Positions 1 through 49,698 of a stretch of DNA of 64,000 nucleotides are shown here, piece by piece. The position numbers and the translations under genes are program-made. Below the pieces are notes generated by a model. It made no database searches. It was given only the letters and a program-made list of their open reading frames with translations, and was not told the DNA's origin. Source of the stretch: Bigelowiella natans CCMP2755 (Eukaryota > Protista > Cercozoa); assembly GCA_000320545.1 (NCBI GenBank), contig ADNK01002970.1, forward strand, positions 34,466-98,465. The letters run 5' to 3'. Every line of letters begins with the position of its first letter. Within the stretch, counting starts at the first letter, position 1.

Positions 1-71
1 AATTTAAGTTGATATATGAATTTATGAGGATTACAAATACTAAGACACAGGCGTGTGTCAATGTGCGCACG

Positions 72-106
<35 letters not shown>

Positions 107-2629
107 ATTATCCTTCGTTCATGCTCACGTTTCATCGTCAGTGGGGTAATTTGAAGTCCTGGTACCTAAAAACCATTCCTCAGAGGAAGCGCATAAACGG
201 GTAATAAGCTCCAACCATGACCACCATCATCATTGTTGTCGCCGCTATTATCCTTTACACCGACGCATGCAGACCGTCACAATAACGAAAATACAACATG
301 GTGCCGGAGATGTATTTGGGAATACAGCAGTCTCTTGTTTCTACCACATCTGCTCATCCTTCTTTCCGTAAATCATGCAACTAAACACCCCATCTTTGCA
401 GAATAAAGGACATGCTACAGAGTCTAGAGATGAAGGTAAATTTTCTCTTTTGAGGATTACAGAGGGGGAAAAGAGGGGGGGGGGGGGGGGTCATCTACGC
501 ACGCGTGTGTATGTGACTTATGTGCCTTTGTAAGTCTTATTCATAACGTGTTTGACAGCTAGAGGGACGTCACCACAACGGCATTGATGACTGCAAAAAC
601 ATGGCTAAAATATGTGTAATATACCAGTGCCTCTGTCCTTAACATGTCACCGTATTTATGAATTTTGGAGGGGATAGAGCAATGTGGTTTCCAGCTCCCC
701 AACATCAATTATTATCGTCACCGCCACCACCATTCGTCGTCATTAAGCTAACACCCCTCCTTCTCCCTTTTTAAACTTATACTACCAGGGGCACTTGCTA
801 GGGCGATCCCTTAAGCCATTCGTCACCGGCAGCACGGATAATTCCCACATGAGTGAGTGATGGGATAGATATGGAATCAAATTCTTCCAACAAAATGAGC
901 TCTGATCTTTTTGTGTATTCATGTGAGATGATGCCATCGATAACGCTCATCCTATCCGTGCTAGCTAGATCTGGCCTTTGATCCGTTTATCGCTTCGCCC
1001 CAAAAATATCAGGGCACATTATTCATGGGCGCGGTGGACGCGGTGGGCGCGGTGGTGCTGGTGGAAGGGGTAACTAATTCCAATATTACATGTGCGCACT
1101 GGGTATCCAACTAGAAATGCAACACTACTCTCATTTTACTAGCTGTTCCACGTGCAGGTCGCCATTTCGTTGGGAAAGGAGAAGGACGAGGTAGGAGAGG
1201 GCGAGGTAGGAGAGGGCGTGGAAGGGGGAGGCGTCTACCGGGAAGAGGAAGAGTAGCCTACTGAATAGGCCATGAAATGAAAGAAGTAATTGGTGGAGTA
1301 GAACAATAGAAACTTATTTTGCATGAAATAACAAAAGTGATGTAAGCGCTGCAATGTCGCTAGGAAACGCTAGAGCACATCGTATGCTGCATGCAGCACG
1401 AGCATAGCTGAGCATTCTAGGCATGGCTTTAGTGGAGTGTAAGCGCGCAATCTGCTCAGATGCGCTGCTTAGCTCAAATGAAACGCCACTGTACAAAATC
1501 ATTGCATGCATAAATACTGCCAGTGTATGCAGTAGTAATGGGAATTTTGGCGTAACTAGACAATCATGCGTGCATGCAGTGCTAAGTACAACTACGTGCT
1601 AGAGCATGCGCATTGCTATAGTAGTACTAGCACATGCACTTGCTAGTTAGCCGCCTTCCAAAGGAAATAAATTTAGGCTATGTCCACACACATTACACAC
1701 ACAAAGCGATAAATCAACTTAAGACAGTGTAGTACTAGCTCTCGACGACTTTTTGTATTTTTGTCACGGCATCATTAGATGTAGCATTGCTAGCATTGTA
1801 GACCATGCACATCCTCCTGATCAAAAGGATGGGCTCATAGCTGTTAGCGCTACTCGAATGACATGCTAGCATGTGCACGTCTAGACGTGCATGCATGCAG
1901 CATGCATGCATATAGGCTAGCGTGTAAAGTTTAAAAAGATGCTTGTCTAAATAATGGTTTTGTTTTAGAATTTGCTAGCATGTACACAAACGAAGTTCTT
2001 AATTTCTCGAACGACGCTGCGCAGCCGCGCGCACCGTCTACACGTGTTAGGCTAACAACGGTTATGTGCATCACCATGTCTAGATGTGCTAGTGTGCCAG
2101 ACCGTGCCTAGCCGCCCCGTAGCACAAGAGCATGTATATGGACTATAAAGTCCCTATGTACGTGTATGCTGTCTGCGATTACTTCATATGTGCCTTTTGC
2201 CTTACATGTACTACATGTCAGCGCACACATGTACATATGCATCCATGTCGTGTACAAGAGCACGTGTGCTTTTTTAATGCACTACGTGAAATAATAAGTG
2301 CATGAGTACATGTGTTTACATGCGCTTACACGTATAATAATGGACTATAAGTCCCTATACAATATACATGCACACATTTGTTGTGTAGTATTGTTAGCTA
2401 GCAGCTAGTAGTCTAGTATTGTTCACAGTCAGATAGTACACACCCTGACATGCTCCAATGCTGACCAGCAAAATGTTCGTGCTTCCGATTGCGCTGAAAA
2501 CAAGTGTGGGCGCACGCACAGCATTGTTAGATTGCGCACAATTATGTTAAGTTAACAGCATAATTTTTAACAATAACAAAACGTTGACTAGGGATTCAAT
2601 GGTACAAGATTATTCACATAAGTGTGGGC

Positions 2630-4142
2630 CTATTTATCCTCAGAAGCTACAACTTCTCTCAAAAACGACATAAGTGAGTCCTGGTATCTCTGGACTCCGC
2701 GTTCCATCAAAAGCTTTATTTGTCCTGTTGCGTTATTGAGAAGTGAACTACTCTCTGCAGGGGTCAGTGTGTGGCTTTCAGATGTCTGGACATATTTCAC
2801 AATGCTCCATTTGAACATCGAAAGAGCCCGCGCGCCCTTTTCGCCCTCTTCGTGAAATGGAGTGAGTACTTTAGAGTTTGCTTCCCTCCTGTTAACCCAG
2901 AATGGTGGCTGGTTGTTGCCTCTATTGAAGCACCGTTGGCCCACAGCAGTGTACCAATCGCCCATTCCCGGAGTATCTAGTCGTTTCAGCCACTTTGAAT
3001 TGGGGATGTGGGGTACAACAAGATAAACAACTCTGTACTTCTCTTTGAGTATGAAATCGGCGACTGCATTCATCTGAGAAACGCCTGGGTATCCCAACCA
3101 TATGATATCCTTGCCTTTGACCTCGTCGGGGTAAAACGGTGTCAAGTTACCGGCTGCCTTGTGATCGAGAAACAGAAAATCGTGATTCATACAGTCTTTC
3201 AACCCTTGTGAGCCCCAATAATCTTCAGCTTCACGTATAAAATCCTCGCAAACATCAAACTGATCTAGCATTCTTTCTTGCTGTTGGAGGTATGTTGTCA
3301 ATTTAGTCACTATTTCGCTTTTGAGGTGGGATTTCCAATTCGTCCACCAATTCGAACAGTAGCTTAGCACAATACCTCCAACCCCTCCCTTTCCAAAGTT
3401 CTTATCTAACAACTTTCGAACGCGAGTTCTCATCTTTGATGCCCTACGATGATAGCTTTTCAAAGGCCAACTCTTGAATGTACGGCGCACTTCCTTCTCT
3501 AATTTAAAACAACAATCTCTCTTCTCCGTCCTATCTTTAGGTATAATATTTGGGTTAGAGGTTTTAAGCATGAAATAGATCAAGCCAAGTCCATGCCCGA
3601 TCATGGACTCCTTCCATTTGCACTCATAAGGTTCTTCCTCTGCTTGAAAAGATCTAAGATACTTGAGCCATTTCATCACTGTCGTGTATAGATTCACTTT
3701 ACTTTTGGCAGCCCGCATTCGAAAATATTTTTCTGCTTGCTCTTGATGCCGCTTGTGAACACTAACAGTAACCCACCATACTAGAAACTTAAACTTTTCG
3801 GATGTGCCTCTTGCGGAGAGGAGTGGCTCTTGAATTGGAAGTTTTTTATTCCTTGCATGCATACTTAATAATTGTTCGCCAATCTGAAAATTCATCACAC
3901 ATAACAAACAGCAGCAGATTTAGGTTAAGAGCTTCAATTTCGCTCTTGATATTATAACCACCCTTCCCTTTTCTGGAGCGATTGGTTTGTTTTTTAACAT
4001 TAGTACCTCATCGTCCAATTGGTGTTTGCAATCCAGAAACAGGTATTTCAAAACGTCTGAATTTTCAACACATCATAATGAGCACATACATACACATAGA
4101 CACATAAACACACAACACACAGCCTAAACATATAAAATAATA

Positions 4143-4182
<40 letters not shown>

Positions 4183-4198
4183 ATATATATGTGTGCGG

Positions 4199-4236
<38 letters not shown>

Positions 4237-4994
4237 TGTCATAAACAGGGACCGTTGTCAATAGTTTCTGTCCTGATCATGTTCCAAAGCAACGAGTCTA
4301 TGTTGCGTGCAGCAATGGGTTTCGCATTATTTCTTAGCAAGAAATTAACCATCGGCATATTGCCTCTTGCACAAGCGATGTAGAGGGGTGATGAAATCTG
4401 ACTGGCGTGTATATCCGCTGAAGGCCCGTTTGGATCTGCTTTTGCTTCTAATAAATATTGGGCAATCTGAAGGTCCTTCCTTTTGTTTTTTTGGGCAGAG
4501 CGATGACATAGAATACCGAGAGAAGAAAGGGGGGAAGCTTTTGCTTCAATGAGAAACCTCACGGTTCTGTATTTACGATTTTCAATAGCATACATCAATG
4601 CGGTCTTTCCGTTGTATGCCTCTTCTATGTTTGCCCCGAACTTCAGCATGATTTTTGCTGCATTTATCCGGCCATTGTAGCAAGCAACCAGGAAGTTTGG
4701 TTCCCCATTGGGGCTGTGAAGGGCATCGCCTTTAAGCTCTATGATTCGCTTGATAAGTTCTCGCATCGTTTTACAAGGATTTTCCGAACTCGGGAACTCG
4801 GAGCGAAGCCCATGCATGCATACATTGTACAACTGAGACGATGGCTCGTAACTACAACTATTTTCGCGGTCCAATTCAGCAATTTCTTCACTCCAATGTT
4901 GGGTTTGTCTCGTCCGCTTTCTTTTCCGTTCTCCTGATTGCGTTCTCCGATTCGAATCCTGCCCAAAGTTTCTCAGTCGTCTTCGTTTCTGCAT
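2630..4994 (-). CDS. Three-exon gene: ankyrin repeats + C-terminal Dam-like (N6-adenine methyltransferase-fold) domain
   Basis: ORFs 4239..5048 (ankyrin motifs GKTALMYA, SPLYIACARGNMPMVNFLL) and 2630..3907 join in frame through GT-AG introns 4246-4057 and 4006-3884 and a 50-nt middle exon 4056-4007 (YVLKYLFLDCKHQLDDE). First ATG at 4994. Segment ~3271-2789 (IIWLGYPG...VYLVVPHIPNSKWLKRL...FWV...WSIVKY) aligns by eye with the C-terminus of the gypsy polyprotein. Confidence 0.8.
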
Positions 4995-5675
4995 CTTGTA
5001 GCTGTCGCGCCCCTTCTTCCTACTTCTGACACGGGGAGGGTGCACCAATCAAGCAACTTGTGCAATGATTTAACTCCTTGTTGCGGGAGGCTGTCTCTCT
5101 TTTCCGACCGTCATTAACGGACGAATAACGGGCATTACCGGTTATTCTCCCGACCTTTTCGCATACCAACGGTTACTGACCGCCGATGTCCTTCTTACGT
5201 GGCTCGGTAATGGATTCAAGTACAAGGACGCGTGCCCATTCTAAAGTCATTCAATGCGCATAAAATGCCCTGCATTTCGTTAAAAAACGTGAAAAAAAGT
5301 GTATGGAAGGTCTGAGAAGTACCTTCACAGCGGTAGGAAGGAGGAGTCGTACATAAAGCTGGTAAGCTGGTGCGAGTAAGCCACTGCTTGCTGGTAGTGG
5401 CGCCCCTCATCTCAAGGGATAGATTGCCCACTAGCAGGAGGCGGAGAATTCGATTTAAAGTAACAAGGTTCTCTCCATTTAATCTGTTGTGCCGCGGAGC
5501 GATCTGTCTAGGTTTGAAAATAGCGTCGCTCTTTTTCTCGTGAGTTCGGAGGACGATGCTTTTCTCCCGATGCAAAATGACGCATCTTTCCAATTCCCCA
5601 CGTTTTACGTTTCTTCTTAGCATTGCACGAAACATATTAAATACTTGTTAGATTGGAGATTGACGGCGAAGTAAC

Positions 5676-6871
5676 ATGAGTTGGCTGGGGTCCATGTTCG
5701 GACGAGGTACTTCTTCTGCGTTCTTCTGACTTGATGTTAGTCTTATGTCTCACAAATACCCAATTTCCTACTCTGGACTTACCATAAGGTGGGGAAAGCA
5801 TTCCCCAATGGAATGGAGATAGATCCCTCGATGGGCACAAGGTAGCAATCTTCCAGCATGACTAATAATACAAGGATATTGACTAGTCGGCAGTACTGTC
5901 TCGATTTGTGTTAGGGGGGTTATCATCATACCTGTAATAACAATAAGTAGATATTGTTGGAATATGTTAGTAATGTAGACTAATTGGCATCATCATCATC
6001 ATCATCATCATCATCATTTTGTGTGTTGCTTTAATCCAGAGACACACGAAAGCACTGCTGACAAATGTAAAGATAATCCGTGAGCGTTTTGCAAACTATG
6101 CGTATCAGGTTGTGGCCACCTAAATACATTCTTCTCCCACAAGAAATAATAGAAATTTACGATCGATCAGTGTTTTAAGTAAATTCACGTATATCCCTCG
6201 ATGATTGTAACTCCTAAGGTCGTCATGATGACGGAAGCTGCAGAGCAACTTTCTGACTGTTTGTCGCAGTTTTACAGGTAATTGCTCTTATTATTTTTCC
6301 AATCGGAAAAGCTTGCTCATTGTTAATATAGACTGTGTTAAATTTAGCATCAAATATCACATAACACACACATCTAGTTATACATAGAAATTGTATAGAA
6401 TATAGAAATTATTCTTAAATTTGTTCTGTATTTGTATTATGGTACGACTTAATCAGCGGTTCAAGGGATAGGGCAGCAAAGCGAAGAGTAGAGGTTAACG
6501 TTACTTCATAGTATTTAATCTGTAACCGGTTTTTGTTTAGCCTGTTATCGCTACTACATCTTCTTCCTCTGCTACTATTTGACCACTATCCCAACATATC
6601 CATGCATATATCTTCCATGCGTATTCATACATATAATAACAGGCCTTTGAAGATGCCAACCGAGGCATGCTTGATCACGCCTCGGCCCATTTTGACGCCA
6701 AGTCATTTGAAGATAAGATACTAAACGAATTCGACGACTTCATTGCGGATATTGAAAGGGTAGTAGCAGTAGTAATAGTAGTAGTAATAGTAGTAGTAGC
6801 AGCAGTGGGGGAATTTTGATGTTATAGTAGGAGCTTATGTCGGTGAGGACTGCATCATACATTGTGTTACC

Positions 6872-6907
<36 letters not shown>

Positions 6908-7478
6908 AAATCAAATGGAAGGGTACAGTTAAGATATAAAAATATCATTCATCTATCTTACGAGCGACGTCTATGCTGCCTTCCCTCTTGACTTTAGTCG
7001 TATTTCCTCATACTTATATTACCTTTTGTCTAAAATCATCTTACATCTTTCTCCTCTCCCCCCCTCTCCTCGTCCCTCTATCCTGCCACCTCAAGGTTGA
7101 AAGGGAGATCCAGCATACTGAAATGGTTGGTGTTGTATATGTATATATATTTTATACCTGTATGAGTAAGCTTTTGTACTTTTCATTCTAGAGATCCCAT
7201 GCCATGGCTTTTCTTCCTTGTTGTGAATAGTTAATAGTAATGATACCGTCTGACAACGACAACGATGAAAATGAAAATGGCACAGATAATCCTGATAATA
7301 CTCACTTTAAACAATGATAACTTGTAGGCGCATCTCGCCGTGAATGAAGTCAAATCTAGGGTATTATCACTTCTGCACAACCGAGAACTCACGTCCATTC
7401 TCTTTAACTACTATGTGTTTTATTCGATAGTATTAATAGCAGTGTTGGCATCATTATTATCTCACCATCAACGCACAT

Positions 7479-7514
<36 letters not shown>

Positions 7515-8119
7515 TTATGATGGTCCATGGCCGAAGGTTGATCAGCTTCTTGAGCGAAAACTAGAAGAAGAGGAGGGTACTAGTACATGTCCATCTTTCG
7601 CGTGTTGTGCAGTTGTGATGATGATGATGATGATGATGATGCAGCAAACAGGGTTCCTCTTATTCTTATTCTTCTTATTATTCACCTTGTTGATGTCGTC
7701 TTTGTTGTCATGGGTATGGATTTTATCTGCTCTAAAAACTCCTGATTACTTATCCATTTCTTCATCACCATCATTGACTATCATTGATTAGCATTTAACG
7801 AGGGTAAAGATCTAGAAGCTTCAGTGAAGAACATGGCCAAACGGTAGTAGTGAGTAAGTAGTATTTGTTGTTAGCAGTGGTTACTTACCATTTAGAAGAG
7901 TAGAAAGATGTTAGTTATTGTGAAGCTGCTTCTTATGGTCCAATTCCAACGAATAATATACCCTCCTCGTCCCCCCCCCCCCCCCCCCTTCCTCCTCCTC
8001 CTCAAACGGTGCAAAGGTCTTCGTTCTACGATCAAATAAAGAGAGGGGTAGATACAACAGTCAAGTATCAACTAGCTAACCGGTACTACTCTCAAAATTA
8101 GTGGAACAAAATTGTAAGA

Positions 8120-8150
<31 letters not shown>

Positions 8151-9232
8151 GAGAGAGAGTAATTAAGATAGTGTTGGTGATGACGCGACGAAGAGGAAGA
8201 AGAAGAAGATGATGATGATGATGACGGCACCCATCCATCAGAGAACAGTCAATTAACAAAACAAGAGTGTTAATTATTGCTTTTCCTTAGATTTTCTTGT
8301 TGTTCTTCTTCTTCGATATCGTTGATAGCTTTAGACGTATGGACGACTCTCTAGTGAAGCTAATGGAGTTACAGTTCATCTTCTTCTCGGTGCTACTGCT
8401 GTGTGCTCATCAGCATTTCTTATTATCATCATCGTTTTAGATAGATTGTATCTCCCTCAATATTCTAGACACCACATGATACACCCGAAAGTTTCACTTT
8501 CAATGCTCGTAACCTCATCATTGAATACTATTACACCACACATTTCACATTTCACATGTAACAATAATATATATATTAATATGATGGTTTACTATCTAAT
8601 CAGTCGGGAGCTGGGACTTTCAGCGAGTTTCGCAATGAGATACCGATGTATTGTCTTCCAATGCATACATGCTACTACGACTACCCCTACTCGTCATCAT
8701 CAGCGTCATTAGTGATGAATATTGACCAACATCTTGATGATGAAAAGATCACAATGATATAATATGTGTACTAGGTATCACAAGCAGCAAGAACAACGAT
8801 TAGCAGATATAAAGTCAAGAGGAGGAGGAGGAGGAGGCGCATATGGGTGGTTCTTATTATTATCATCAGTAGTACTAGAAGAAGGAGAAGAAGAAGAAGA
8901 AGAAAAAGTAGAGCAACAACAGCGACAACTACTAATAAAACAATAGCACGTCTCTCTTCTAATGCCTTATGCTACACTCACAGAACAACTACTTCTAACA
9001 GCAATAATGATAAGAATAGTAATAACAATACAACTACCACTTCTATTAGCAGCACATCTAGACATTCAATATATACTACCACCATCATCATCATCGATAT
9101 TGCTTGCATTGTATCACAGGTATGAGGATGCAAACATCGATTTCACCGAGCTTATCAAGCAAACTCCGGTAGAAAGAAGAAGACGAAGAAGAAGAACATA
9201 GCAACCAGCAGAAGCGTATTATATATATATTG

Positions 9233-9276
<44 letters not shown>

Positions 9277-9373
9277 ATGAAGAGGGAAAGATTACCACAA
9301 CACTGATATACTAGAATAATGGCAAACGTTGTCCGTGGTTACTTTATTTCTTCCTCTGACTTGTTTCTCGATG

Positions 9374-9405
<32 letters not shown>

Positions 9406-9904
9406 GGTGGTGTTCTTCTAGGTTACTATCATGCCATTTACAAGAGTACAAAACGATCAATTTGGCTTATACTCTCTAGATGAATCATACTTCACTCCCA
9501 CAAAGTACCAGTCGTTGTAATAGTTGCAGTAGTTGTAGTAGTAGTAAGTAGTAGTGTCGTAATCATTATTTTTAACGACAACTACTCTTTTTAATAAGCA
9601 ATCGGTGACGTTGCTGTTATTGTTATTGCTGTGTGATGAAATATAAGATTATTCGTTTGTGGTTATTCATTGAGATAATGTAGCATAATGTAGCATACAT
9701 TAATGTAACATTGCATCCTAATCGTTTGTCTTCCTTCATAGGCCATCATCATCATCACAAGGAGGAGGAGGAAGAGGCAGTGGTGAATATTACACACCTT
9801 CAAGTACAGGAGGGGGGGGGAGCATTTCTTCATCACGTTCACAAACACCAATAAAGAATGCTGCCGCTATGCGCCAGGTAGCAGTACTACCAATATTGTT
9901 CAAA

Positions 9905-9944
<40 letters not shown>

Positions 9945-10726
9945 TGTATTACCTTCCAACCTTCACTACTCTTCTTCTTCGGCGCGCTAATCGTATTCCC
10001 ACAAATGATGATCAACGCATCACTGAACTATGAACATGTTATTGAATCTTAGAGCAATGGCGGCTATCATCGTCCTCCTCCTCCTCCTCTTGCATCCGTA
10101 GCAGCAGGAGTAGCAAAAGTGTATAAGGTGCAAGTATGGACACGTCCTTTTGGCCTGACTGTCAATAGAAGAGGAGAAGTTACTCGTGTTGAAACACACG
10201 CAGAAATGGTTGGGATAGTGAAAGGAGATAAGGTGATAATGACAGCGATGATAACGATGATGGTGATGATGACTTATATTTAGCTCATTTGCTTAACAAC
10301 ACACGTCGCATGATAACAATCACAAAGGTTATTGCCCTCAACGATCATTTCATAAATCCGAAGAAGTTTGGGGATATTGCGAGAGGGTCCAAGGTTCTCA
10401 CACGCTATGTACTAAAAGAGATGTCAATGACTCATTTTACCATTCATTAATACGAGCGATCCAGCACTAAGAGCGATTATTGCATATTATTGATTGTTGC
10501 GGAAGGGTAGCAAACTGCAATTCTGTTTATATTTACTTACTATAACAATACATAGAGCTTGTCGTTAAGTGCTATAATTGATTTCTGTTGTTGTTGTTAT
10601 TGTTCTTTATCGATATAATACTTGCAGCTTCCTTACGAACTTACGTTGAGAAGAGAGACTGAATTTGGTAGCACTTACAGTTGTTGTTGCTGTTGTTATA
10701 GCTGTGGTATTTAGTAGTAGTAGTAT

Positions 10727-10761
<35 letters not shown>

Positions 10762-12668
10762 ATGGTAGTGGTGGTATGCATATAATATTCAGTAGTTTCT
10801 GTCATTATTTATATGTTGTTGGTTTAATAGTCCTCGTTTGCTACCTTGTCTTCTCTCATTACACAATGTTGTAGAGGACGCTAAAACGCCTCCCCATGGG
10901 ACCAGCAGCAGCCGGAGATCATCAGTGCAGGTATTTATCCATATCTGCACATGATATTATATCTACTGTATATAATAATATAATTATCTATTTGATCGAT
11001 CAGTCTTTCACCCTTCCCTTCCTCTCTCACACTTGCACCCATTTTCATATGGGGCCTTCGTTTGTGAATACGTCAATTTTGTTTTGGATTATTTTTATCA
11101 CTATCATCATCATACTTTACTCGCGCTGCTGCGGTTTGGTTTTTATGATATTTTATTAACTGTATTGGCTATGCTCGATCTCCAATTTTTGCTTATTATC
11201 GTCACCCTCTTTGTGCTTTCTACAATCCCTTACACCACACATACACGCATACACATTATTATTGTTAATAATAATAATATTAATAATATATCACTGACAT
11301 GCCGCATACACAACGACAACAATAATACTACTAATAATAACTAACACAGCTACCATTATCCTCTATCATTTTCAATAATACTCGACAAAGACGTTCAAAC
11401 TCGCTTTCCTATAGTGTATTTGTAGTAGTAGTAGTAGTAGTAGTAGTTGTTGTTGTTGTAGTTGTAGTAAGATGATTCATTATCATAATCACGATGATGA
11501 TGATAGTAATGAAATACTGTTGCGCTGCAAATAATATTCTTTTTCCGTTTTCTATCGATGATATGGTAATCATTGCCATTATCATTGTGTTGGTGACTTC
11601 CTACCAATATTGATAGCAAGAACGATGATGCATTGATGAAATGGGTGCACAAAATGATGATGATGTTCTTCAGGCTGCAAGGGGGTCACCGCATCGTCCT
11701 AGAGACATTGTTAGCAGCAGCAGCAGCCAGGGAGCAAGAACGGTGCGTGCATGTATCTAAATTGATGACTATATACCCTTATTAGCTTATGTTGTGCTAC
11801 TAGAAGCCCCAACGACGAATAACGAATAACGAAGATGTATTATTGTTATTATTATTATTATTATCATTACCTGTTCTTATAGTTATTATTGTTATTTGTT
11901 GTTGCTGATGTTCTCTGTATGCAGAGCCGTGGTGTTAGGCGTGCACGCACTCCTGGAAGTGGTAGTATTAGTCGTTTAAGCAGCAGTAGAGACTCAAGTC
12001 GTGATAGCTTGAGAGAGGTACTAGCCCGCCCGCCCCCCGTTATTATTATTGATTCATGTTTCACACCTGTTTGCTCTCATACAATAGAATTATTAAGATT
12101 ATTTCATACAACACACAGTGGGTGCTCACTCGCTGTGCTTTGGATCATCATAATAACTACTAATATACCATTCTTCTCACATACTACTACAAACTCCGAC
12201 TACTGGTTTTTGCTAGTATCTTATTACTGCTCGTCTTCGCTCTCACCCCCACTTCCTCTTTTCTCACTGCCCTTATTCGCTCTCACCCCCACTTCCTCTT
12301 TTCTCACTGCCCTTAGCTAGTGAAGATACCTGAAGGCAACAACGATTATGCTACACAGCTTGAACAAGTACATAGACACTCAGTAGTACTAGATATGCTG
12401 ACACTACACAGCTTGAACAAGTACATAGACACTCAGTAGTACTAGATATGCTGACACTACACAGCTTGAACAAGTACATAGACACTCAGTAGTACTAGAT
12501 ATGCTGACACTACACAGCTTGAACAAGTACATAGACACTCAGTAGTACTAGATATGCTGACACTACACAGCTTGAACAAGTACATAGACACTCAGTAGTA
12601 CTAGATATGCTGACACTACTTCTAGTAATACCACTGCTAGTAGTAGTAGTAGTAGTAGTAGTAGTAGG

Positions 12669-40684: not shown

Positions 40685-41110
40685 TTGGATGCAGATCCGA
40701 AAATCCTTCGTTTGGCATCCAATTCTCCGGTGGCCTGCCCCACCGGTGAACAGGAATGTGGTGCAGGGATGAGGGGAAAAGCCACCCTCGTGACCGAAAA
40801 ACCCACCACCCAGTGCCATTTCGGCGAATGTGACTTTGAATCTTGAATGCAGATCCACACATCCTTCATTTGGCTACCGAGTCACCGGTGGCTGGGGCGA
40901 CAAGTCTGTCTACCCCACCAGTGACCAGGAATGTGGTTCAGGGGTAGGAGGTGATCAACCCCCCGCCCATTGCCGCATCACACCAATTTTTTTCCGAATG
41001 TGACTTTGAATCTTGAATGCAGATCCACACGTCCTTAGTCTGGCTGCCTTGTCACCGGTGGCTGGGGCGACATGTCTGTCCATCCCACCGGTGTCCAGGA
41101 ATGTGGTTCG
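40685..41110 (+). repeat. Imperfect direct repeats (about 180-bp period, 2 close copies plus 1 diverged copy)
   Basis: CGAATGTGACTTTGAATCTTGAATGCAGATCCACAC...GTCACCGGTGGCTGGGGCGACA...CCAGGAATGTGGTTC at ~40825 and ~40995; weaker copy at ~40688. A separate repeat ACCACAACATCCCC occurs at ~40438, 40548 and 40590. Confidence 0.85.
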
Positions 41111-43982: not shown

Positions 43983-44308
43983 TGTAGCGCGTACCACTAC
44001 GCGGGCACAAGTCACGTGCGACAACAAAGGGGTTGTCGCGGATATAGAATATAGATAACGTAGATATTAATACAGCATAGGCACGTGGGTTCCGGCGGGA
44101 CTCATGGCAGCACACCGGAAGTGTGCTGCCCCACGTGCGGCGGCATTCGCGAAAGCTTCGCGAATGATTACGCAGTGCACGATTTAATAAAAATATAATC
44201 TTTAATAAAAATAAACACAACTCTTCAAAAGGAAGCAAACGTGCCTTTCCCCCCCCCTGCCTACTTGTGCACGTAGCGCCTCGGCCTGTGAACACCTTAC
44301 GCGCAACA
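43983..44308 (+). repeat. 5' LTR
   Basis: TGTAGCGCGTACC...TTACGCGCAACA; matches 49373-49698. Contains AATAAA signals. Confidence 0.97.
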
Positions 44309-44313
44309 ACCTT

Positions 44314-44331
44314 TGGCTTCCACACACGGGA
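44314..44331 (+). promoter_or_regulatory. Primer binding site (tRNA-Glu/Asp-like 3' end)
   Basis: TGGCTTCCACACACGGGA lies 5 nt after the LTR. Its reverse complement ends ...CCCGTGTGTGGAAGCCA, resembling a tRNA-Glu acceptor end. The cognate tRNA was not verified. Confidence 0.7.
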
Positions 44332-44347
44332 AACGATTTGACTAACA

Positions 44348-47300
44348 ATGTCACAGCAGCTAGAAGAACAGCAGGACTTTGGCTCGCAGGCCGTGCAAGG
44401 GCACGAGCAGAAACAGGAAAGGAAGGGCGATACGGACGCTAAGGAAGGAGGAGGAACACCTCCACAGGCACCGCCGGGACCAGCACCCGGGATTAAGAAA
44501 GCAGATGCAGCAGCAGAGGCACTGGAGAACTTCTACGAGGCGGACGACGAGGACGTGGCCGCCGAAAGCAAGAAGGTCGTAATGGCATTACGAGCCTTGC
44601 GACCCAGGGCGAGCAACTACGCCAAACTGAAAGTATCGATAGAATACAAGTATCAGACACATGATGTTTGGGCAGCTATCATGCAGGACATCATGGATTA
44701 CGAAGCAGACTTACCTCCAGAGTGGGCAGCTTTGTTTAGGAACGACGGGGGTCTGGGCGCCTCGCGGGGGACGACCCAGAGCACCGTCAAGCAGCAGCAG
44801 CCGGTACAGCGGAACACCCAGTTCATGTCTGTTAAAACAGCACCGGTTATGATAACGAAATACAACGGGAAAAGAGGTGAGGCAAGGAGGTGGTGGAAGA
44901 ACGCTAGGAGTATACTCTGTGACTTTACCCCTAACCCCACCGAAAACGACAAGCTCAAATGGCTAGCTATAATAAAGCAAGCCATGGACCTTTACGAGAC
45001 AGGCAGGACCCGGATCAGGCAGCTAGAGAAAATACACACTACAGTTAGTGGGCTACGAGACGTTGAGGCGATAATGAAGGCTTTTGTAAATGAACAGGAT
45101 GCTAACTCCCTACCCCAGGCTATTAGAAAATACAGAGCAATGATGCAGCATGAGAGAGAACCTGTTAGAGACTTTGCCACGCGCTTCCAGGATATGATCG
45201 ACGAACTACATGATTTTAATTACAACACAGGTGATGATCAGGCAAGGTTTGAAGAGTTCAAGTTAAAGATAAAGGAATCCACTTACGTTACGGAGAAAGG
45301 CTACACCACGATGGAGGCAGCAGTGCAGGCTATATCCCTACGCGAGCAGGAGCAGGACCGCAAGTTTACCAGCCCTAAGGTACCTGGCATAGGAAACATT
45401 AACGCTATTAAGCCGCAGCGAGACTGGTACAAGGACAGGGAAGGTAACCGACGTTGCGGATACTGCTCACGTAAAGGGAAACACACCGCTAAAGACTGCA
45501 GAGACAGGAAAGAAGGACGACCCAGGATGACGATCAGGCAGCTCAACGAACACTACGAGAAGTTAAAGAGAAAGAAAGGCAGAGGACAAGGATATAACAA
45601 CAGCAAATGGCAAGGCAGCAACAACGGGAAGAACAATAAATATAAGAACAAAAAGCAGAACAGTATCAATGCTATACAGCAGCAGATAAACGGAATATTA
45701 GATCACCTTAAGCAGGCGCCGACGAAGACAGCAGTACCAGCAACGCAGGACCAAGACAAGCCCATGACCCTAGACGACATAAAGAACTTAGGAGTATGCA
45801 ACATTAATGACGAAGACGCTAACAGGACTATCAAAGTTGCTATGACCAAGGTTAAAGTTAAAGACAGCTACGGAGACTACAAGAAACTACCTGCCCTTTG
45901 GGATAGTGGCAGCATGCCGAAGTCCTTCATAAGCCTAAGCACAGTAAGAAGGTTAGGACTATTGGATCAAGTGACTAAGAAAGAACGTAAATATGCTCAA
46001 GCAGACGGAAGCTCTTCCATGAAGACCGTCGGTGAGCTAATGCTAAAGCTACAGATACCTGGCAGCGACGCGGAGACCCAAATCAAGACCCGAGTAGCCA
46101 TGACTTTATCCATGGAACTACTCCTCGGACAGGATGCCCTAGAAAAATTAGGGGGGATCATATCATTCTACAATCACAAGATATACTTTGCTAAGTTGCC
46201 AAAGAAGTCAGGCAGGACCATCAGCCAGAACATGATACGGCTTGACGAGTGGACCTCTGAGTCAAGCGTTAATGCGTTAGAGTTTATGGACCTAGCGGAC
46301 AACAAGCTACCTACACCTACCGAGCTACGGAAGAAGAACCCCGGCAAGACCATCCGACAGATAACGGAGCTACTGGACAAGACCCCCCCAGCTGATGATT
46401 GGGATATCGACAAAGGCAAAAAGTACATTAATAAAATATTAAACGAGAAGTACTCTGACATCACCAAGCCGACGACGAAGCCCTCCAGCAAGCTTACCCC
46501 AGTAAAGATCGAGCTAAAGAAGGGATACGAAGAGTGCATCATCAATGACCCAGAACATAGGCGACCGGAAGCGGACTGGGAAAAGATAGAGTGGCAGATC
46601 AATGAATGGGCAAAGGAAGGGAAGATAGAGCCAAGCAACTCACCATGGAACGTGAGACATGTGCTAGCTAAGAAACCTACTTACCCTTTCTTCCGCCTGG
46701 CGCACAACTTCATCCGCCACAACCGAGTAATAAAGAGGATCCAGACACCTACACCAAGGATAGATGACGTTATTGAACACGTCATAGGATACAAATACTA
46801 CTCTTCCCTAGATAAAAATGAATCATACATGCAGACACCCATCCACAAAACCTCCCGCCCCATTACCGCGTTCTCCAGCAGGCACAGGAAGTGGCACTTC
46901 GTCGTATTCCCTTACGGCCTAAGCATATCAGGGGATGCGTTCAGTAGTCAGAACTACAGGGCATACACACATGATGGGATGGCGTCTGTGTTGTGGGTGT
47001 TTGTGTTTGTGTATGTGGATGATGACATAATATGTACCAACACAGTCGTCGCTCAGATCTTCCTCCTGGAAAATATATTTATTAGGTTTGCACACTTCGG
47101 TTTTACTATTAGACTGCAGAAGTGTACATTCCTAGCTACAAGAATCAAGTGGTGTGGATATTACCTGGAGCAAGGCCGCATCACCCCAAACCCCGAGAAA
47201 GTAGCAGCACTACAGCAAGCCCCTAAACCTAAGAATGCAAAGGAGTTAAAGTCATTCTTGCAGACTGCAGCTTGGATACTACGTAGGTTCTCCCCTACCT

Positions 47301-49321
47301 ACGCTAGGACTGCAGCTGCTTTTACTACTGCTTACCGGAAGGAGAACTCTGTAGGCCTCAGCTTCGCTAAGGTGTGGGCCAAGGCTGGCCTTGATGCCCA
47401 CTTCGATAACCTAATAAAGTTATGCAGCAACACCCTATTGAATGCTAAGCTAGACACTACTAGACCAGCTACCCTATGGACAGACTGGTCTAAGCTAGGT
47501 ATGGCTGCTGTACTTACCCAAGACCAGCAGATCATACGGGTGTGGGGCAGGGCCTGCACAGCAGCTGAGGCCAAGTACAGCCCTACAAAAGGAGAGTATA
47601 AAGCCATGACTGAGGCGCAGAGGAAACTAAGATACTACCTGCTGTCGGTGCCCAGCTTCACCTTAATGACTGACCACAAGCCCCTCCTAGGCATCGACCG
47701 CAAGCTCGAAGCGCCTAACGATGAGTATGCAGCTATGAGGGCGGACACGGAAGAGTTTAGGGACAAGAGGACAGTGGTCTACGCACCAGGAGACAAGCAG
47801 CTTGCTGACTATTTCAGCAGGCTGTTCGAAAAGAAAGTCCATACCCAGGTCACCCCTATGGTTAACGCGATTACCTTCGAGGACGGCGACTTCCTGCCTG
47901 AGCCAGTGGAGCTCCAGCACCTTCAAGAACACCTGGATAAATACAAACACAAGCATGAGGTACTTAGTGATAGGATATATGTATACACTAATAATGTTAG
48001 GCGTACCTACGTGCCACGGCGGACCAGGGGAGCCCTTCTCTTTACCGCCCATGGACCTGCACACGTAGGAGAAAACCATATCACTGCTCTACTCTACCAT
48101 TACTACTGGCCCTACAAGCTAAAAGAGATAAGGACATACCTGCGTGGCTGCAGGTGCTCCAGCTTGAAGGCGGCAGGCGTCGCCACCAAGGAGTCCAGCA
48201 AGAGCCGTGCATCTAAGAAAATCAAAGCAAGGAACTTCTTAGATATCGTGCAAATTGATGTTTATAAGTACGATGGCTATCACTACCTTACCTTCGTTGA
48301 TGTGGCCACTGGAAAGTGCTGGGTTAAAAAGATTATCAAGGTCAACGTTGCTAAGAAGAACAAAGGCTTATATAAGCAGAGGCTTACTAACTGCTACCGT
48401 ACCTGGGAGTCTGAGCTCCAGGCTATCCCTGATGAAGTTAGCATAAACAAGATACCAAAGAAGTTACATGTGGATAATGAGACCTCTCTTCTACAGCTAC
48501 CACACCCTAATATTGATGCCTCACCTGTATACTATGCCCAGTCCAACTCCAAGGTAGAGCGACTCCACCGCACCTTGGCCAACCTAAGCAGGATAAATAG
48601 CACCACACCAGACAAGATACAAGGGTTAGTAAACGACACCTTCACGTCTGGGGGAGGTATCAAGGATAAGGAGAGGGAAGAAGGCGACGACAACGACGAC
48701 GATACCGAGAGCGAAGACGAGAAGGTCCCGTACGATGGCCGAGTTCTAAAGGAAGGACAGTATGTTAGGGCCAAGGTAAATCTGAGATCGAGAAATAAAC
48801 AAGACCCCTTCTGGGGTGGCGTTGCAAAGGTTACCGAGAGGAAGGGGAGGAAGCAGTACTACATCTATGATGGGAACAGGGTCACCTTGCGCCACATCAG
48901 TCACCTAAAGAATTATGATATCGGTGAGAAGCTCCTAGAGGATGTTAAAGTAAACCCTACTGTGTGGGAGCGAGCAATGCCTTGTTTAGGACCCCGACCT
49001 AAGTTCGATGTGGAATATGGAAACAATAAGGTCAGGGTGAACGACGATTGGCGCATGAAGATTGTCTATCTAGGCTACCCTGGATTACGAAATATGGAGA
49101 GGGTAGCTATGAAAATAAAGGACGGAAAATATCAGCTACTCTACCTAGCTGTTCCCGACTTACCCTTTGAGCACTGGTATAAGGTCCTGGGGGACCTTGA
49201 TGCAGAGGGCTGGTATGGACACGAACCTAAGGACGAAGGTGAGTTCTGGGTAAGCGACAAAGGAGATAAGGTTAGAGAGGAATCTATTACCTGGTGGTTG
49301 GTGAAGTTCCGAAAGCGATGA
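44348..49321 (+). CDS. Gag-Pol polyprotein (Gag with CCHC, protease, RT, RNase H, integrase, C-terminal Dam-like domain)
   Basis: 1657 aa. CGYCSRKGKHTAKDC (45455), LWDSGS (45902), FPYGL and YVDD (47012), WTDWS...TDHKPL RNase H, HHCC-like finger, D(48257)-D(48473)-E(48557), SH3-like integrase C-terminal region, and an extra ~130-aa domain at 48930-49318. Confidence 0.96.
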   Translation: MSQQLEEQQDFGSQAVQGHEQKQERKGDTDAKEGGGTPPQAPPGPAPGIKKADAAAEALENFYEADDEDVAAESKKVVMALRALRPRASNYAKLKVSIEYKYQTHDVWAAIMQDIMDYEADLPPEWAALFRNDGGLGASRGTTQSTVKQQQPVQRNTQFMSVKTAPVMITKYNGKRGEARRWWKNARSILCDFTPNPTENDKLKWLAIIKQAMDLYETGRTRIRQLEKIHTTVSGLRDVEAIMKAFVNEQDANSLPQAIRKYRAMMQHEREPVRDFATRFQDMIDELHDFNYNTGDDQARFEEFKLKIKESTYVTEKGYTTMEAAVQAISLREQEQDRKFTSPKVPGIGNINAIKPQRDWYKDREGNRRCGYCSRKGKHTAKDCRDRKEGRPRMTIRQLNEHYEKLKRKKGRGQGYNNSKWQGSNNGKNNKYKNKKQNSINAIQQQINGILDHLKQAPTKTAVPATQDQDKPMTLDDIKNLGVCNINDEDANRTIKVAMTKVKVKDSYGDYKKLPALWDSGSMPKSFISLSTVRRLGLLDQVTKKERKYAQADGSSSMKTVGELMLKLQIPGSDAETQIKTRVAMTLSMELLLGQDALEKLGGIISFYNHKIYFAKLPKKSGRTISQNMIRLDEWTSESSVNALEFMDLADNKLPTPTELRKKNPGKTIRQITELLDKTPPADDWDIDKGKKYINKILNEKYSDITKPTTKPSSKLTPVKIELKKGYEECIINDPEHRRPEADWEKIEWQINEWAKEGKIEPSNSPWNVRHVLAKKPTYPFFRLAHNFIRHNRVIKRIQTPTPRIDDVIEHVIGYKYYSSLDKNESYMQTPIHKTSRPITAFSSRHRKWHFVVFPYGLSISGDAFSSQNYRAYTHDGMASVLWVFVFVYVDDDIICTNTVVAQIFLLENIFIRFAHFGFTIRLQKCTFLATRIKWCGYYLEQGRITPNPEKVAALQQAPKPKNAKELKSFLQTAAWILRRFSPTYARTAAAFTTAYRKENSVGLSFAKVWAKAGLDAHFDNLIKLCSNTLLNAKLDTTRPATLWTDWSKLGMAAVLTQDQQIIRVWGRACTAAEAKYSPTKGEYKAMTEAQRKLRYYLLSVPSFTLMTDHKPLLGIDRKLEAPNDEYAAMRADTEEFRDKRTVVYAPGDKQLADYFSRLFEKKVHTQVTPMVNAITFEDGDFLPEPVELQHLQEHLDKYKHKHEVLSDRIYVYTNNVRRTYVPRRTRGALLFTAHGPAHVGENHITALLYHYYWPYKLKEIRTYLRGCRCSSLKAAGVATKESSKSRASKKIKARNFLDIVQIDVYKYDGYHYLTFVDVATGKCWVKKIIKVNVAKKNKGLYKQRLTNCYRTWESELQAIPDEVSINKIPKKLHVDNETSLLQLPHPNIDASPVYYAQSNSKVERLHRTLANLSRINSTTPDKIQGLVNDTFTSGGGIKDKEREEGDDNDDDTESEDEKVPYDGRVLKEGQYVRAKVNLRSRNKQDPFWGGVAKVTERKGRKQYYIYDGNRVTLRHISHLKNYDIGEKLLEDVKVNPTVWERAMPCLGPRPKFDVEYGNNKVRVNDDWRMKIVYLGYPGLRNMERVAMKIKDGKYQLLYLAVPDLPFEHWYKVLGDLDAEGWYGHEPKDEGEFWVSDKGDKVREESITWWLVKFRKR

Positions 49322-49363
49322 AGGTCTAAGGGAATAAGGAAGGAAGGAAGGAGCAACGTGACT

Positions 49364-49372
49364 TGGGGGAGG
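49364..49372 (+). promoter_or_regulatory. Polypurine tract
   Basis: TGGGGGAGG immediately 5' of the 3' LTR, preceded by a purine-rich run at 49328-49353. Confidence 0.85.
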
Positions 49373-49698
49373 TGTAGCGCGTACCACTACGCGGGCACAA
49401 GTCACGTGCGACAACAAAGGGGTTGTCGCGGATATAGAATATAGATAACGTAGATATTAATACAGCATAGGCACGTGGGTTCCGGCGGGACTCATGGCAG
49501 CACACCGGAAGTGTGCTGCCCCACGTGCGGCGGCATTCGCGAAAGCTTCGCGAATGATTACGCAGTGCACGATTTAATAAAAATATAATCTTTAATAAAA
49601 ATAAACACAACTCTTCAAAAGGAAGCAAACGTGCCTTTCCCCCCCCCTGCCTACTTGTGCACGTAGCGCCTCGGCCTGTGAACACCTTACGCGCAACA
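49373..49698 (+). repeat. 3' LTR
   Basis: Direct repeat of 43983-44308. Confidence 0.97.

What the first reader, a model, noticed from the sequence alone, without database searches (positions are those of the whole stretch)
2630..4994. Host ankyrin gene contains the same LGYPG domain as the retrotransposon (domestication or capture)
Seen: host IIWLGYPGVSQMNAVADFILKEKYRVVYLVVPHIPNSKWLKRLDTPGMGDWY..PFWV..WSIVKY aligns with no gaps in the core to element IVYLGYPGLRNMERVAMKIKDGKYQLLYLAVPDLPFEHWYKVLGDLDAEGWY..EFWV..WWLVKF. The host copy sits in a spliced three-exon gene behind ankyrin repeats, with no RT, integrase or LTR remnants visible. Conservation of LGYPG despite otherwise strong divergence implies the odd motif is selected, not decay. 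Inference: the domain was exchanged between TE and host. An ankyrin-MTase-fold fusion could be a decoy or restriction factor against the element, or part of the chromatin-marking machinery.
Basis: partly seen in the sequence, partly recalled or inferred. Interest (0 to 1): 0.8.

Follow-up and report, generated by a model that had tools for sequence, protein, structure and literature searches.

The report
Host gene keeps retrotransposon Dam-like domain
A single-copy gene of the alga Bigelowiella natans, conserved under purifying selection in a related organism, carries the same dead-looking adenine-methyltransferase-like domain that ends the integrase of a retrotransposon family, which makes it the first candidate for a host-domesticated copy of this transposon domain.

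Summary
The 417-codon minus-strand exon (2633-3883) and the C-terminus of the LTR-retrotransposon polyprotein (44348-49321) share a real domain. BLASTP gives E=3e-9, and an HMM built from transposon copies only scores the host at 72 bits.

The window is Bigelowiella natans. The host domain models confidently (pLDDT 81). Its best structural matches are phage Dam-type N6-adenine methyltransferases. GYPG sits where the catalytic NPPY should be.

The host locus is single-copy and has no RT, integrase or LTR remnant nearby. An ortholog with 76% protein identity was found. dN/dS is 0.19 overall and 0.14 in the domain, with dS 0.86. This is a maintained gene, not a decaying fragment.

All 40 other database relatives are retrotransposon C-termini. 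Transfer from transposon to host is therefore the likelier direction, but the tree is unrooted and cannot prove it.

The fusion to the ankyrin exon is plausible but unproven. The splice sites are canonical, but 163 other in-frame two-intron models exist and no transcript spans the junctions.

The scan has noted the transposon-side domain at least eight times on other DNA of this genome. It had not noted the host gene. The decoy or restriction idea is untested.

The parts
4247..4994 (-). Proposed exon 1: basic NLS-like N-terminus followed by ankyrin repeats. The ATG is at 4994-4992.
   Evidence: Pfam Ank_2 7e-18, Ank 4e-16, Ank_3, Ank_4 and Ank_5. Single copy in the genome. The only database entry is the unspliced 251-aa ORF.
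4057..4246 (-). Proposed intron 1 (190 nt, GT..AG, phase 1). It contains a (CA)n/(TA)n microsatellite.
   Evidence: Sequence read. The length fits the B. natans mean intron of 184 bp (PMC12730881). The donor context CCT|GT is not the AG|GT type. Not verified by transcripts.
4007..4056 (-). Proposed 50-nt exon 2. It would encode an amphipathic helix that completes the last half ankyrin repeat.
   Evidence: Frame continuity worked out. This is one of 163 in-frame two-intron models. Inference only.
3884..4006 (-). Proposed intron 2 (123 nt, GAG|GT..TTTTCAG|A, phase 0).
   Evidence: Not verified by transcripts.
2633..3883 (-). Exon 3, 417 codons (stop at 2630-2632). It holds an N-terminal 200 aa with no known relatives, then the Dam-like domain, then a 50-aa tail.
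   Evidence: ORF. Single copy. The ortholog L060/P0002 has 76.9% nucleotide identity over 3799-2646. dN/dS is 0.19.
2783..3280 (-). Host GYPG (Dam-like pseudo-methyltransferase) domain, exon-3 residues 202-367.
   Evidence: Transposon-only HMM, 72 bits. AF2 pLDDT 80.9, pTM 0.79. BFVD best hits are phage DNA N6-adenine methyltransferases, E 1e-4 to 1e-2. The PDB wide search lists mostly class-I methyltransferases, Z up to 6.1. dN/dS 0.14.
3083..3094 (-). GYPG motif, after the beta-4 strand, in the position of catalytic motif IV (NPPY) of Dam.
   Evidence: Model secondary structure: strand 59-62, then GYPG at 63-66, then a helix. hhalign against phage T1 Dam puts WL-GYPG on WL-NPPY, but that alignment is itself not significant, E=0.12. 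P and the last G are near-invariant in the family.
43983..49672 (+). Resident Ty3/gypsy-type LTR retrotransposon. LTRs are 43983-44282 and 49373-49672, with a single 1657-aa ORF at 44348-49321.
   Evidence: The 300-nt LTRs are 100% identical. Pfam RVT_1, RT_RNaseH and Integrase_H2C2. At least 150 genomic copies have a 100% identical C-terminal domain.
48920..49318 (+). Element-borne GYPG domain at the extreme C-terminus, after the integrase SH3-like tail.

Best explanation
Exon 3 (2633-3883, minus strand) belongs to a single-copy Bigelowiella natans gene. It carries a domesticated copy of the C-terminal domain of a Ty3/gypsy-type retrotransposon lineage.

The domain has the compact fold of phage and DIRS Dam-type N6-adenine methyltransferases. 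The catalytic Asn-Pro-Pro-aromatic motif is replaced by a conserved Gly-aromatic-Pro-Gly. It most likely works as a non-catalytic binding module, not as an enzyme.

In the element it sits where chromoviruses carry a chromodomain. I therefore infer that it tethers the integrase to some chromatin or DNA feature. The host protein has kept the same surface: 10 of 13 family-conserved residues. It probably joins that surface to ankyrin repeats and a basic, NLS-like N-terminus. That would let it bind the same ligand in the nucleus, either for a host chromatin function or in competition with the elements.

Shown: the homology, the fold class, single-copy status, the absence of other transposon parts, the ortholog, and purifying selection.
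Inferred: the direction (transposon to host), loss of catalysis, the ankyrin fusion, and any binding or competition role.
For: Homology: BLASTP E=3e-9; transposon-only HMM 72 bits over host residues 202-367.

Distribution: a profile search of 1.84 billion representatives found 42 proteins. All but the host ortholog are polyprotein C-termini or fragments with the integrase tail in front of the domain.

Host status: one copy of the domain exon, of its N-terminal half and of the ankyrin exon in the 91-Mb genome. No RT, IN or LTR similarity within 12 kb.

Ortholog and selection: P0002/L060 at 76% identity. dN/dS is 0.19 overall and 0.14 in the domain, with dS 0.86. pS is 0.51 against pN 0.15, which by my arithmetic is Z about 10.

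Fold: AF2 pLDDT 80.9. Best BFVD matches are phage DNA N6-adenine methyltransferases. PDB matches are mostly class-I methyltransferases, with N6-adenine enzymes prominent among them (KsgA/Erm/DIMT1, PCIF1, E. coli and T4 Dam). ESM Atlas structure hits go to PF05869 clusters and to RT-bearing metazoan clusters.

Motif: G-[YFHWC]-P-G is conserved across the family.

Literature: the DAM-TE preprint reports that eukaryotic DAM domains are transposon-borne and treats orphan copies as remnants (10.64898/2026.05.21.726589).
Against: - Direction is not proven. The tree is unrooted, and a root on the long host stem (1.29 substitutions per site) would make the transposon copies a clade.
- Placement of the host next to P0018 has only 86/73 support. 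Joining the host to the resident elements is rejected only marginally or not at all (AU p=0.033 and 0.069).
- No Pfam hit to PF05869, and hhalign to T1 Dam is not significant (E=0.12). Dam kinship therefore rests on predicted structure, with middling scores (PDB Z up to 6.1, Foldseek PDB E at best 0.01).
- Loss of catalysis is inferred from the motif alone.
- The ankyrin fusion has no transcript support. The databases hold only the separate unspliced ORFs of 251 and 410 aa, and many alternative in-frame splice models exist.
- I could not verify whether L060 comes from a transcriptome.
Confidence: 0.7

Rival explanations
1. The ankyrin ORF and the domain-bearing ORF are two separate neighbouring genes. 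The domain gene would start at the ATG at 3862, and no ankyrin fusion would exist.
For: Public databases hold only the separate unspliced products, 251 aa and 410 aa. The ESM Atlas entry starts at residue 8 of the exon, which is that ATG. The first donor, CCT|GT, is atypical. Three single-intron and 163 two-intron in-frame GT-AG models exist, so frame compatibility is cheap. The ortholog contig starts inside exon 3 and says nothing about upstream exons. Two scans for an overlapping or ankyrin-bearing contig found nothing.
Against: The two ORFs are on the same strand, with only 377 nt between the stop of one and the ATG of the next. By my arithmetic from PMC12730881, the mean intergenic spacing is about 1.5 kb. 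Both acceptors are good (A/T-rich, then CAG|A). The intron lengths of 190 and 123 nt fit the 184-bp mean. The ankyrin ORF ends in a half repeat that the 50-nt exon would complete with a suitable helix (my reading).
Confidence: 0.4
2. The exchange went the other way. An ancestor of this retrotransposon lineage captured the domain from the host gene.
For: The unrooted tree allows a root on the host stem. Branch lengths are compatible with it. LTR elements are known to capture domains repeatedly (10.64898/2026.05.21.726589).
Against: About 30 transposon clusters at no more than 50% identity carry the domain at the same junction after the integrase tail, against one host lineage. The fold class is otherwise phage- or transposon-borne in eukaryotes. 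The host copy has three lineage-specific insertions and an extra tail that both transposon subgroups lack. The host attaches inside subgroup B, not between the subgroups.
Confidence: 0.15
3. The 3' ORF is only a decaying retrotransposon fragment that happens to lie behind an ankyrin gene.
For: Similarity to a resident high-copy element. The preprint regards orphan DAM sequences generally as remnants.
Against: The ORF is intact over 417 codons. About 250 of them have no transposon homology. No RT, IN or LTR lies nearby. It is single-copy. An ortholog with the same architecture exists, and dN/dS is 0.14-0.26 in all three parts at dS 0.86. Identity to the resident element is only 30-38%, while that element's own copies are 100% identical to one another.
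Confidence: 0.04
4. The domain is still an active methyltransferase that uses an unconventional GYPG pocket. The host protein would then be an ankyrin-guided adenine (or other) methyltransferase.
For: The fold is retained. A conserved Asp and Asn upstream of the motif may correspond to the cofactor-binding region of PF05869 enzymes (my reading; a lead only). Strong conservation of the motif shows that the pocket matters.
Against: The Asn/Asp that contacts the target amino group in N6 and N4 methyltransferases is replaced by Gly, and the first Pro by an aromatic residue, in nearly all members. From established knowledge, degenerate motif IV marks inactive partners such as METTL14. Even canonical eukaryotic DAM domains gave no 6mA in E. 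coli.
Confidence: 0.1

Closest known systems
DAM-LTR and DIRS retrotransposon DAM domains (Fernandez-Moreno et al. 2026 preprint, 10.64898/2026.05.21.726589; Pfam PF05869-type)
   Same: A small Dam-like methyltransferase fold carried by Ty3/gypsy-type or DIRS polyproteins. It is placed after the integrase in some lineages. The predicted structure is a five-strand sheet with flanking helices.
   Different: The PF05869 model does not detect this family. The near-universal Asn-Pro-Pro triplet is replaced by Gly-aromatic-Pro. Searching the text found no mention of Bigelowiella, Rhizaria, ankyrin or domestication. The preprint interprets orphan DAMs as remnants, whereas here one copy is a conserved single-copy host gene.
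Phage Dam-type DNA N6-adenine methyltransferases (PF05869, e.g. phage T1 Dam)
   Same: They are the best structural matches of the host-domain model (BFVD E 1e-4 to 1e-2, TM 0.42-0.55). The order is the same: strand, motif IV, helix, then a strand ending in Pro, then Trp.
   Different: No significant sequence similarity (hhalign E=0.12). The catalytic NPPY is absent. The context is a eukaryotic host gene.
Host genes domesticated from LTR-retrotransposon proteins (gag-derived Fv1 and the PEG10/RTL family; integrase-derived GIN1). Recalled from general knowledge, not tested here.
   Same: A single-copy, intact, selectively constrained host gene that retains one retroelement domain and has lost the LTRs and other element genes.
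   Different: The retained piece is the accessory Dam-like module, not gag, protease or integrase. No function or restriction activity has been shown.
Pseudo-methyltransferase partners such as METTL14 or Tetrahymena MTA9 (general knowledge). MTA1c appears among weak Foldseek hits.
   Same: A methyltransferase fold with a degenerate motif IV, kept under selection for a non-catalytic role.
   Different: No detectable sequence relationship. No catalytic partner has been identified here.

Membership tests
Pfam PF05869 Dam / eukaryotic DAM-TE family | Significant match to the PF05869 profile | tested here: not met
   No Pfam hit at E up to 10 for the host or element domain. The PF05869 model finds nothing in the whole genome. 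hhalign of the family profile against T1 Dam, itself a 236-bit PF05869 member, gives E=0.12.
Pfam PF05869 Dam / eukaryotic DAM-TE family | Catalytic Asn-Pro-Pro triplet followed by an aromatic residue | tested here: not met
   G-Y-P-G in the host and the resident element, and G-[YFHWC]-P-G across the family. The preprint reports NPP in almost all DAMs.
Pfam PF05869 Dam / eukaryotic DAM-TE family | Dam-like compact class-I methyltransferase fold | tested here: met
   AF2 pLDDT 80.9. BFVD top hits are phage DNA N6-adenine methyltransferases, E 1.3e-4 to 1e-2, probability 0.96-1.0. The PDB wide search lists mostly methyltransferases, but Z is at most 6.1, which is within the range the tool calls middling.
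Pfam PF05869 Dam / eukaryotic DAM-TE family | SAM binding and adenine methylation | not testable with these tools
   Needs biochemistry.
Domesticated transposon-derived host gene | Significant homology to a transposon protein domain | tested here: met
Domesticated transposon-derived host gene | Single copy, without LTRs or other element genes | tested here: met
Domesticated transposon-derived host gene | Ortholog in another species under purifying selection | tested here: met
   P0002/L060 has 76% amino-acid identity and the same architecture. dN/dS is 0.19 at dS 0.86. Synteny could not be tested because the contig is only 1360 nt.
Domesticated transposon-derived host gene | Host copy nested within transposon copies on a rooted tree | tested here: inconclusive
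   On the unrooted tree the host sits inside subgroup B (86/73), across a 97/93 branch from the resident element. No usable outgroup was available. AU tests give p=0.033 and 0.069.
Domesticated transposon-derived host gene | Expression of the host gene | not testable with these tools
   No RNA-seq tool was available. I could not verify whether JGI sample 3300017007 (L060) is a transcriptome.
Ankyrin-repeat protein | Ankyrin repeats in the same polypeptide as the domain | tested here: inconclusive
   The repeats are clear in the upstream ORF. The junction is supported only by canonical splice sites and frame. No spanning transcript or gene model was found.

The most novel reading that the evidence does not exclude
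This is the first host-domesticated retrotransposon Dam-like pseudo-methyltransferase. It would be an ankyrin-linked nuclear protein that has kept the ligand-binding surface the elements use at the tip of their integrase. It would act either as a competitor that limits or redirects integration of GYPG-type elements, or as a host reader of the same chromatin or DNA mark. If so, its binding partner would show directly what transposon-borne DAM domains are for, which the 2026 preprint leaves unanswered.
Probability: 0.25. Interest if true: 0.75.

Novelty: new variant of a known kind. Interest (0 to 1): 0.6.

Why it matters
Retrotransposon-borne adenine-methyltransferase domains were described only in 2026, and their function is unknown. 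Heterologous expression gave no 6mA.

Here a branch of that fold has lost the catalytic motif but stays strongly conserved. One copy has been kept as a single-copy host gene under purifying selection. This argues that the module has a selectable non-enzymatic activity.

It also offers a tractable single-gene handle on that activity: binding partners, localisation, and knock-down in a culturable alga with a very active element family. The case further shows that Pfam-based screens miss this branch, and that not all orphan DAM-like sequences are transposon debris.

Tried and rejected
- Pfam at E up to 10 on both domains and on the ortholog found nothing.
- The PF05869 model against the whole genome found nothing.
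- A profile search of PDB sequences gave only a weak eL21 match to the integrase SH3-like part of some alignment rows.
- The first AF2 run, with a 3-sequence alignment, was unusable (pLDDT 47). I repeated it with 24 sequences.
- Foldseek against PDB gave no hit at E of 0.001 or better.
- The ESM Atlas found nothing for the N-terminal 200 aa of exon 3.
- Looking for a transcript that joins the ankyrin exon to exon 3 failed three ways: a metagenome scan with the ankyrin exon, an exact-match scan with the 5' end of L060, and a word search with the ankyrin exon, which returned only the window's own unspliced ORF.
- Searching the genome with P0018, the nearest transposon relative of the host copy, found no subgroup-B element in B. 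natans, only the resident family at 36% identity.
The spliced model was examined exon by exon only.
- I did not attempt rooting with canonical DAM domains. There is no significant sequence similarity to align on.

Full report
**What is there.** The window is nuclear DNA of the chlorarachniophyte Bigelowiella natans. Hits to the element's polyprotein carry JGI Bigna1 names. The window is contig C767:34466-98465 of a 91.4-Mb assembly.

On the minus strand lie two long ORFs. ORF 4239-5048 contains ankyrin repeats (Pfam Ank_2 7e-18, Ank 4e-16). ORF 2630-3907 has no Pfam match.

On the plus strand, 43983-49672 is a complete LTR retrotransposon. It has 300-nt LTRs that are 100% identical. Its single 1657-aa ORF carries protease, RT, RNase H and integrase signatures. 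At least 150 genomic copies have a C-terminal 118 aa identical to this one.

**The shared domain is real.**
- BLASTP of the two ORFs gives one significant HSP: 38% identity over 72 aa, E=3e-9, with an ungapped core from the GYPG motif to the WY.
- A profile of the host copy, its ortholog and the element copy, searched against 1.84 billion representative proteins, returned 42 proteins.
- Apart from the host ortholog, every one is the C-terminus of a retrotransposon polyprotein, or a fragment that still begins with the integrase SH3-like tail.
- An HMM built from 28 transposon sequences only matches the host exon at 72 bits, over exon residues 202-367. The match starts exactly where the integrase tail ends, so no integrase remnant is present in the host.
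- The motif G-[YFHWC]-P-G is kept throughout.
- Of 13 columns at least 80% conserved in transposon copies, both host orthologs keep 10.

**What the domain is.** Sequence methods do not name it. There is no Pfam hit even at E=10. The PF05869 model finds nothing in the genome. There is no PDB sequence hit for the domain.

With a 24-sequence alignment, AlphaFold2 gives a confident model of the host domain (pLDDT 80.9, pTM 0.79). Its matches are:
- **BFVD:** the best hits are phage DNA N6-adenine methyltransferases (E 1.3e-4 to 1e-2, probability 0.96-1.0, TM 0.42-0.55).
- **PDB wide search:** most of the 50 listed chains are class-I methyltransferases, and N6-adenine enzymes are prominent among them (DIMT1/KsgA/Erm, PCIF1, METTL5, E. 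coli Dam Z 4.9, T4 Dam Z 4.5). The best Z is only 6.1, which the tool itself calls middling.
- **Foldseek against PDB:** nothing at E of 0.001 or better.
- **ESM Atlas:** its own model of the protein matches PF05869 clusters and RT-bearing metazoan clusters at TM about 0.54.

In the model, GYPG follows a strand and precedes a helix. That is the place of catalytic motif IV. hhalign against phage T1 Dam, a 236-bit PF05869 member, aligns WL-GYPG with WL-NPPY, and aligns the following strand-Pro-Trp segment in register. That alignment is not significant by itself (E=0.12).

So the fold is Dam-like, family membership by sequence is not met, and the catalytic triplet is absent. A 2026 preprint describes DAM domains on LTR and DIRS elements and reports Asn-Pro-Pro in almost all of them (10.64898/2026.05.21.726589). 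A text search found no mention of Bigelowiella, Rhizaria, ankyrin or domestication. It regards orphan DAM sequences as transposon remnants.

**The host copy is a maintained gene.**
- The domain exon, its N-terminal half and the ankyrin exon each occur once in the genome.
- tblastn of the element's proteins and blastn of its DNA against window 1-12000 find only the domain.
- The word search found one relative, P0002, on a 1360-nt JGI contig (L060, sample 3300017007). It has 76% protein identity and the same order of parts: N-terminal region, domain, tail. A run of N in the contig explains the apparent frame break.
- Nucleotide similarity covers 3799-2646 only, which is the coding part.
- Nei-Gojobori estimates over 383 codons give dS 0.86, dN 0.17 and dN/dS 0.19. 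By part, dN/dS is 0.26 in the N-terminal region, 0.14 in the domain and 0.13 in the tail.
- pS is 0.51 against pN 0.15, which is far beyond sampling error (Z about 10 by my arithmetic).

This excludes a decaying fragment. I could not verify whether L060 derives from RNA.

**Direction and donor.** A maximum-likelihood tree of 30 domain sequences splits the transposon copies into two groups with 97/93 support. The resident element and a second B. natans family (P0038, Bigna1 67480) fall in group A. The host pair (100/99) falls in group B, next to the environmental fragment P0018 (86/73), on a long stem of 1.29 substitutions per site.

Forcing the host together with the resident element alone is marginally rejected (AU p=0.033). 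Forcing it together with both B. natans families is not rejected (p=0.069). No group-B element closer to P0018 than the resident family exists in the genome.

The tree is unrooted, so nesting is not proven. I favour transfer from transposon to host for four reasons:
- The domain occupies the same post-integrase position in about 30 diverged lineages, against one host lineage.
- The fold is otherwise phage- or transposon-borne in eukaryotes.
- The host copy has three private insertions and an extra tail.
- The shared derived GYPG ties the host copy to this lineage rather than to canonical DAM domains.

**The ankyrin fusion.** They keep the frame. The intron sizes of 190 and 123 nt fit the species mean of 184 bp (PMC12730881). 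The gap between the ORFs is short. The 50-nt exon would supply the second helix of a half ankyrin repeat.

However, enumeration finds 3 single-intron and 163 two-intron in-frame GT-AG models. The first donor is atypical. The databases hold only the two unspliced ORFs. Three attempts to find a spanning transcript failed.

I put the fusion at about 0.6.

**Mechanism.** This part is inferred. The module sits at the integrase tip, where chromoviruses carry a chromodomain. It has lost the residue that contacts the target amino group, yet it is strongly conserved. The most likely role is therefore non-catalytic binding that helps tether or target the integration complex. The host gene has probably kept that binding surface for its own use, or as a competitor. 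None of this is tested.

**Earlier notes of the scan.** At least eight notes on other copies in this genome describe the element-side "dead Dam-like domain". They agree with what I found for the host copy. No note mentions the host gene.

Noticed in passing
window 43983-49672: A complete, very young LTR element. Its 300-nt LTRs are 100% identical and it has one uninterrupted 1657-aa ORF. At least 150 genomic places have an identical C-terminal domain, many within intact 1659-codon open frames.
   Followed up: partly
window 41541-43196 (+), with a 115-nt direct repeat at 40825-41109: A 551-aa lysine-rich ORF with no Pfam match lies just upstream of the 5' LTR and outside the element. Its origin is unknown.
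   Followed up: no
P0038 (JGI Bigna1 67480), elsewhere in the genome: B. natans has a second, diverged element family carrying the same domain, with FAGHPG in place of LGYPG. It groups with the resident family in the tree.
   Followed up: partly
P0008, P0009, P0010, P0015 (JGI Bigna1 gene models): Several annotated B. natans gene models join 60-84% of the element's C-terminal region, at 99-100% identity, to unrelated domains (a WW domain, PF10520, a long membrane-like tail). These are probably chimeric annotations over insertions, but exonisation was not excluded.
   Followed up: no
window 21618-24277 (-): Two adjacent ORFs of 538 and 278 aa lie in a GC-rich patch (51%). They have Gly/Ala/Ser-rich repeats with recurrent GGA(I/L) motifs, a signal-like start and a C-terminal hydrophobic segment. 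This looks like a repetitive, surface-type protein.
   Followed up: no
window 56285-57289 (-): Another ORF ends in ankyrin-like repeats. It did not match the ankyrin exon of the studied gene at E<=1e-6 in the genome search.
   Followed up: no
window 4140-4235: A compound (CA)n/(TA)n microsatellite lies inside the proposed first intron. It could be polymorphic and useful as a marker for the locus.
   Followed up: no
alignment A2 columns 1-190; PDB hit 7qca_LT0: The integrase SH3-like tail plus the following helix of these elements gives a weak profile match to ribosomal protein eL21 (E=0.004). This is probably only a shared SH3-like barrel.
   Followed up: no
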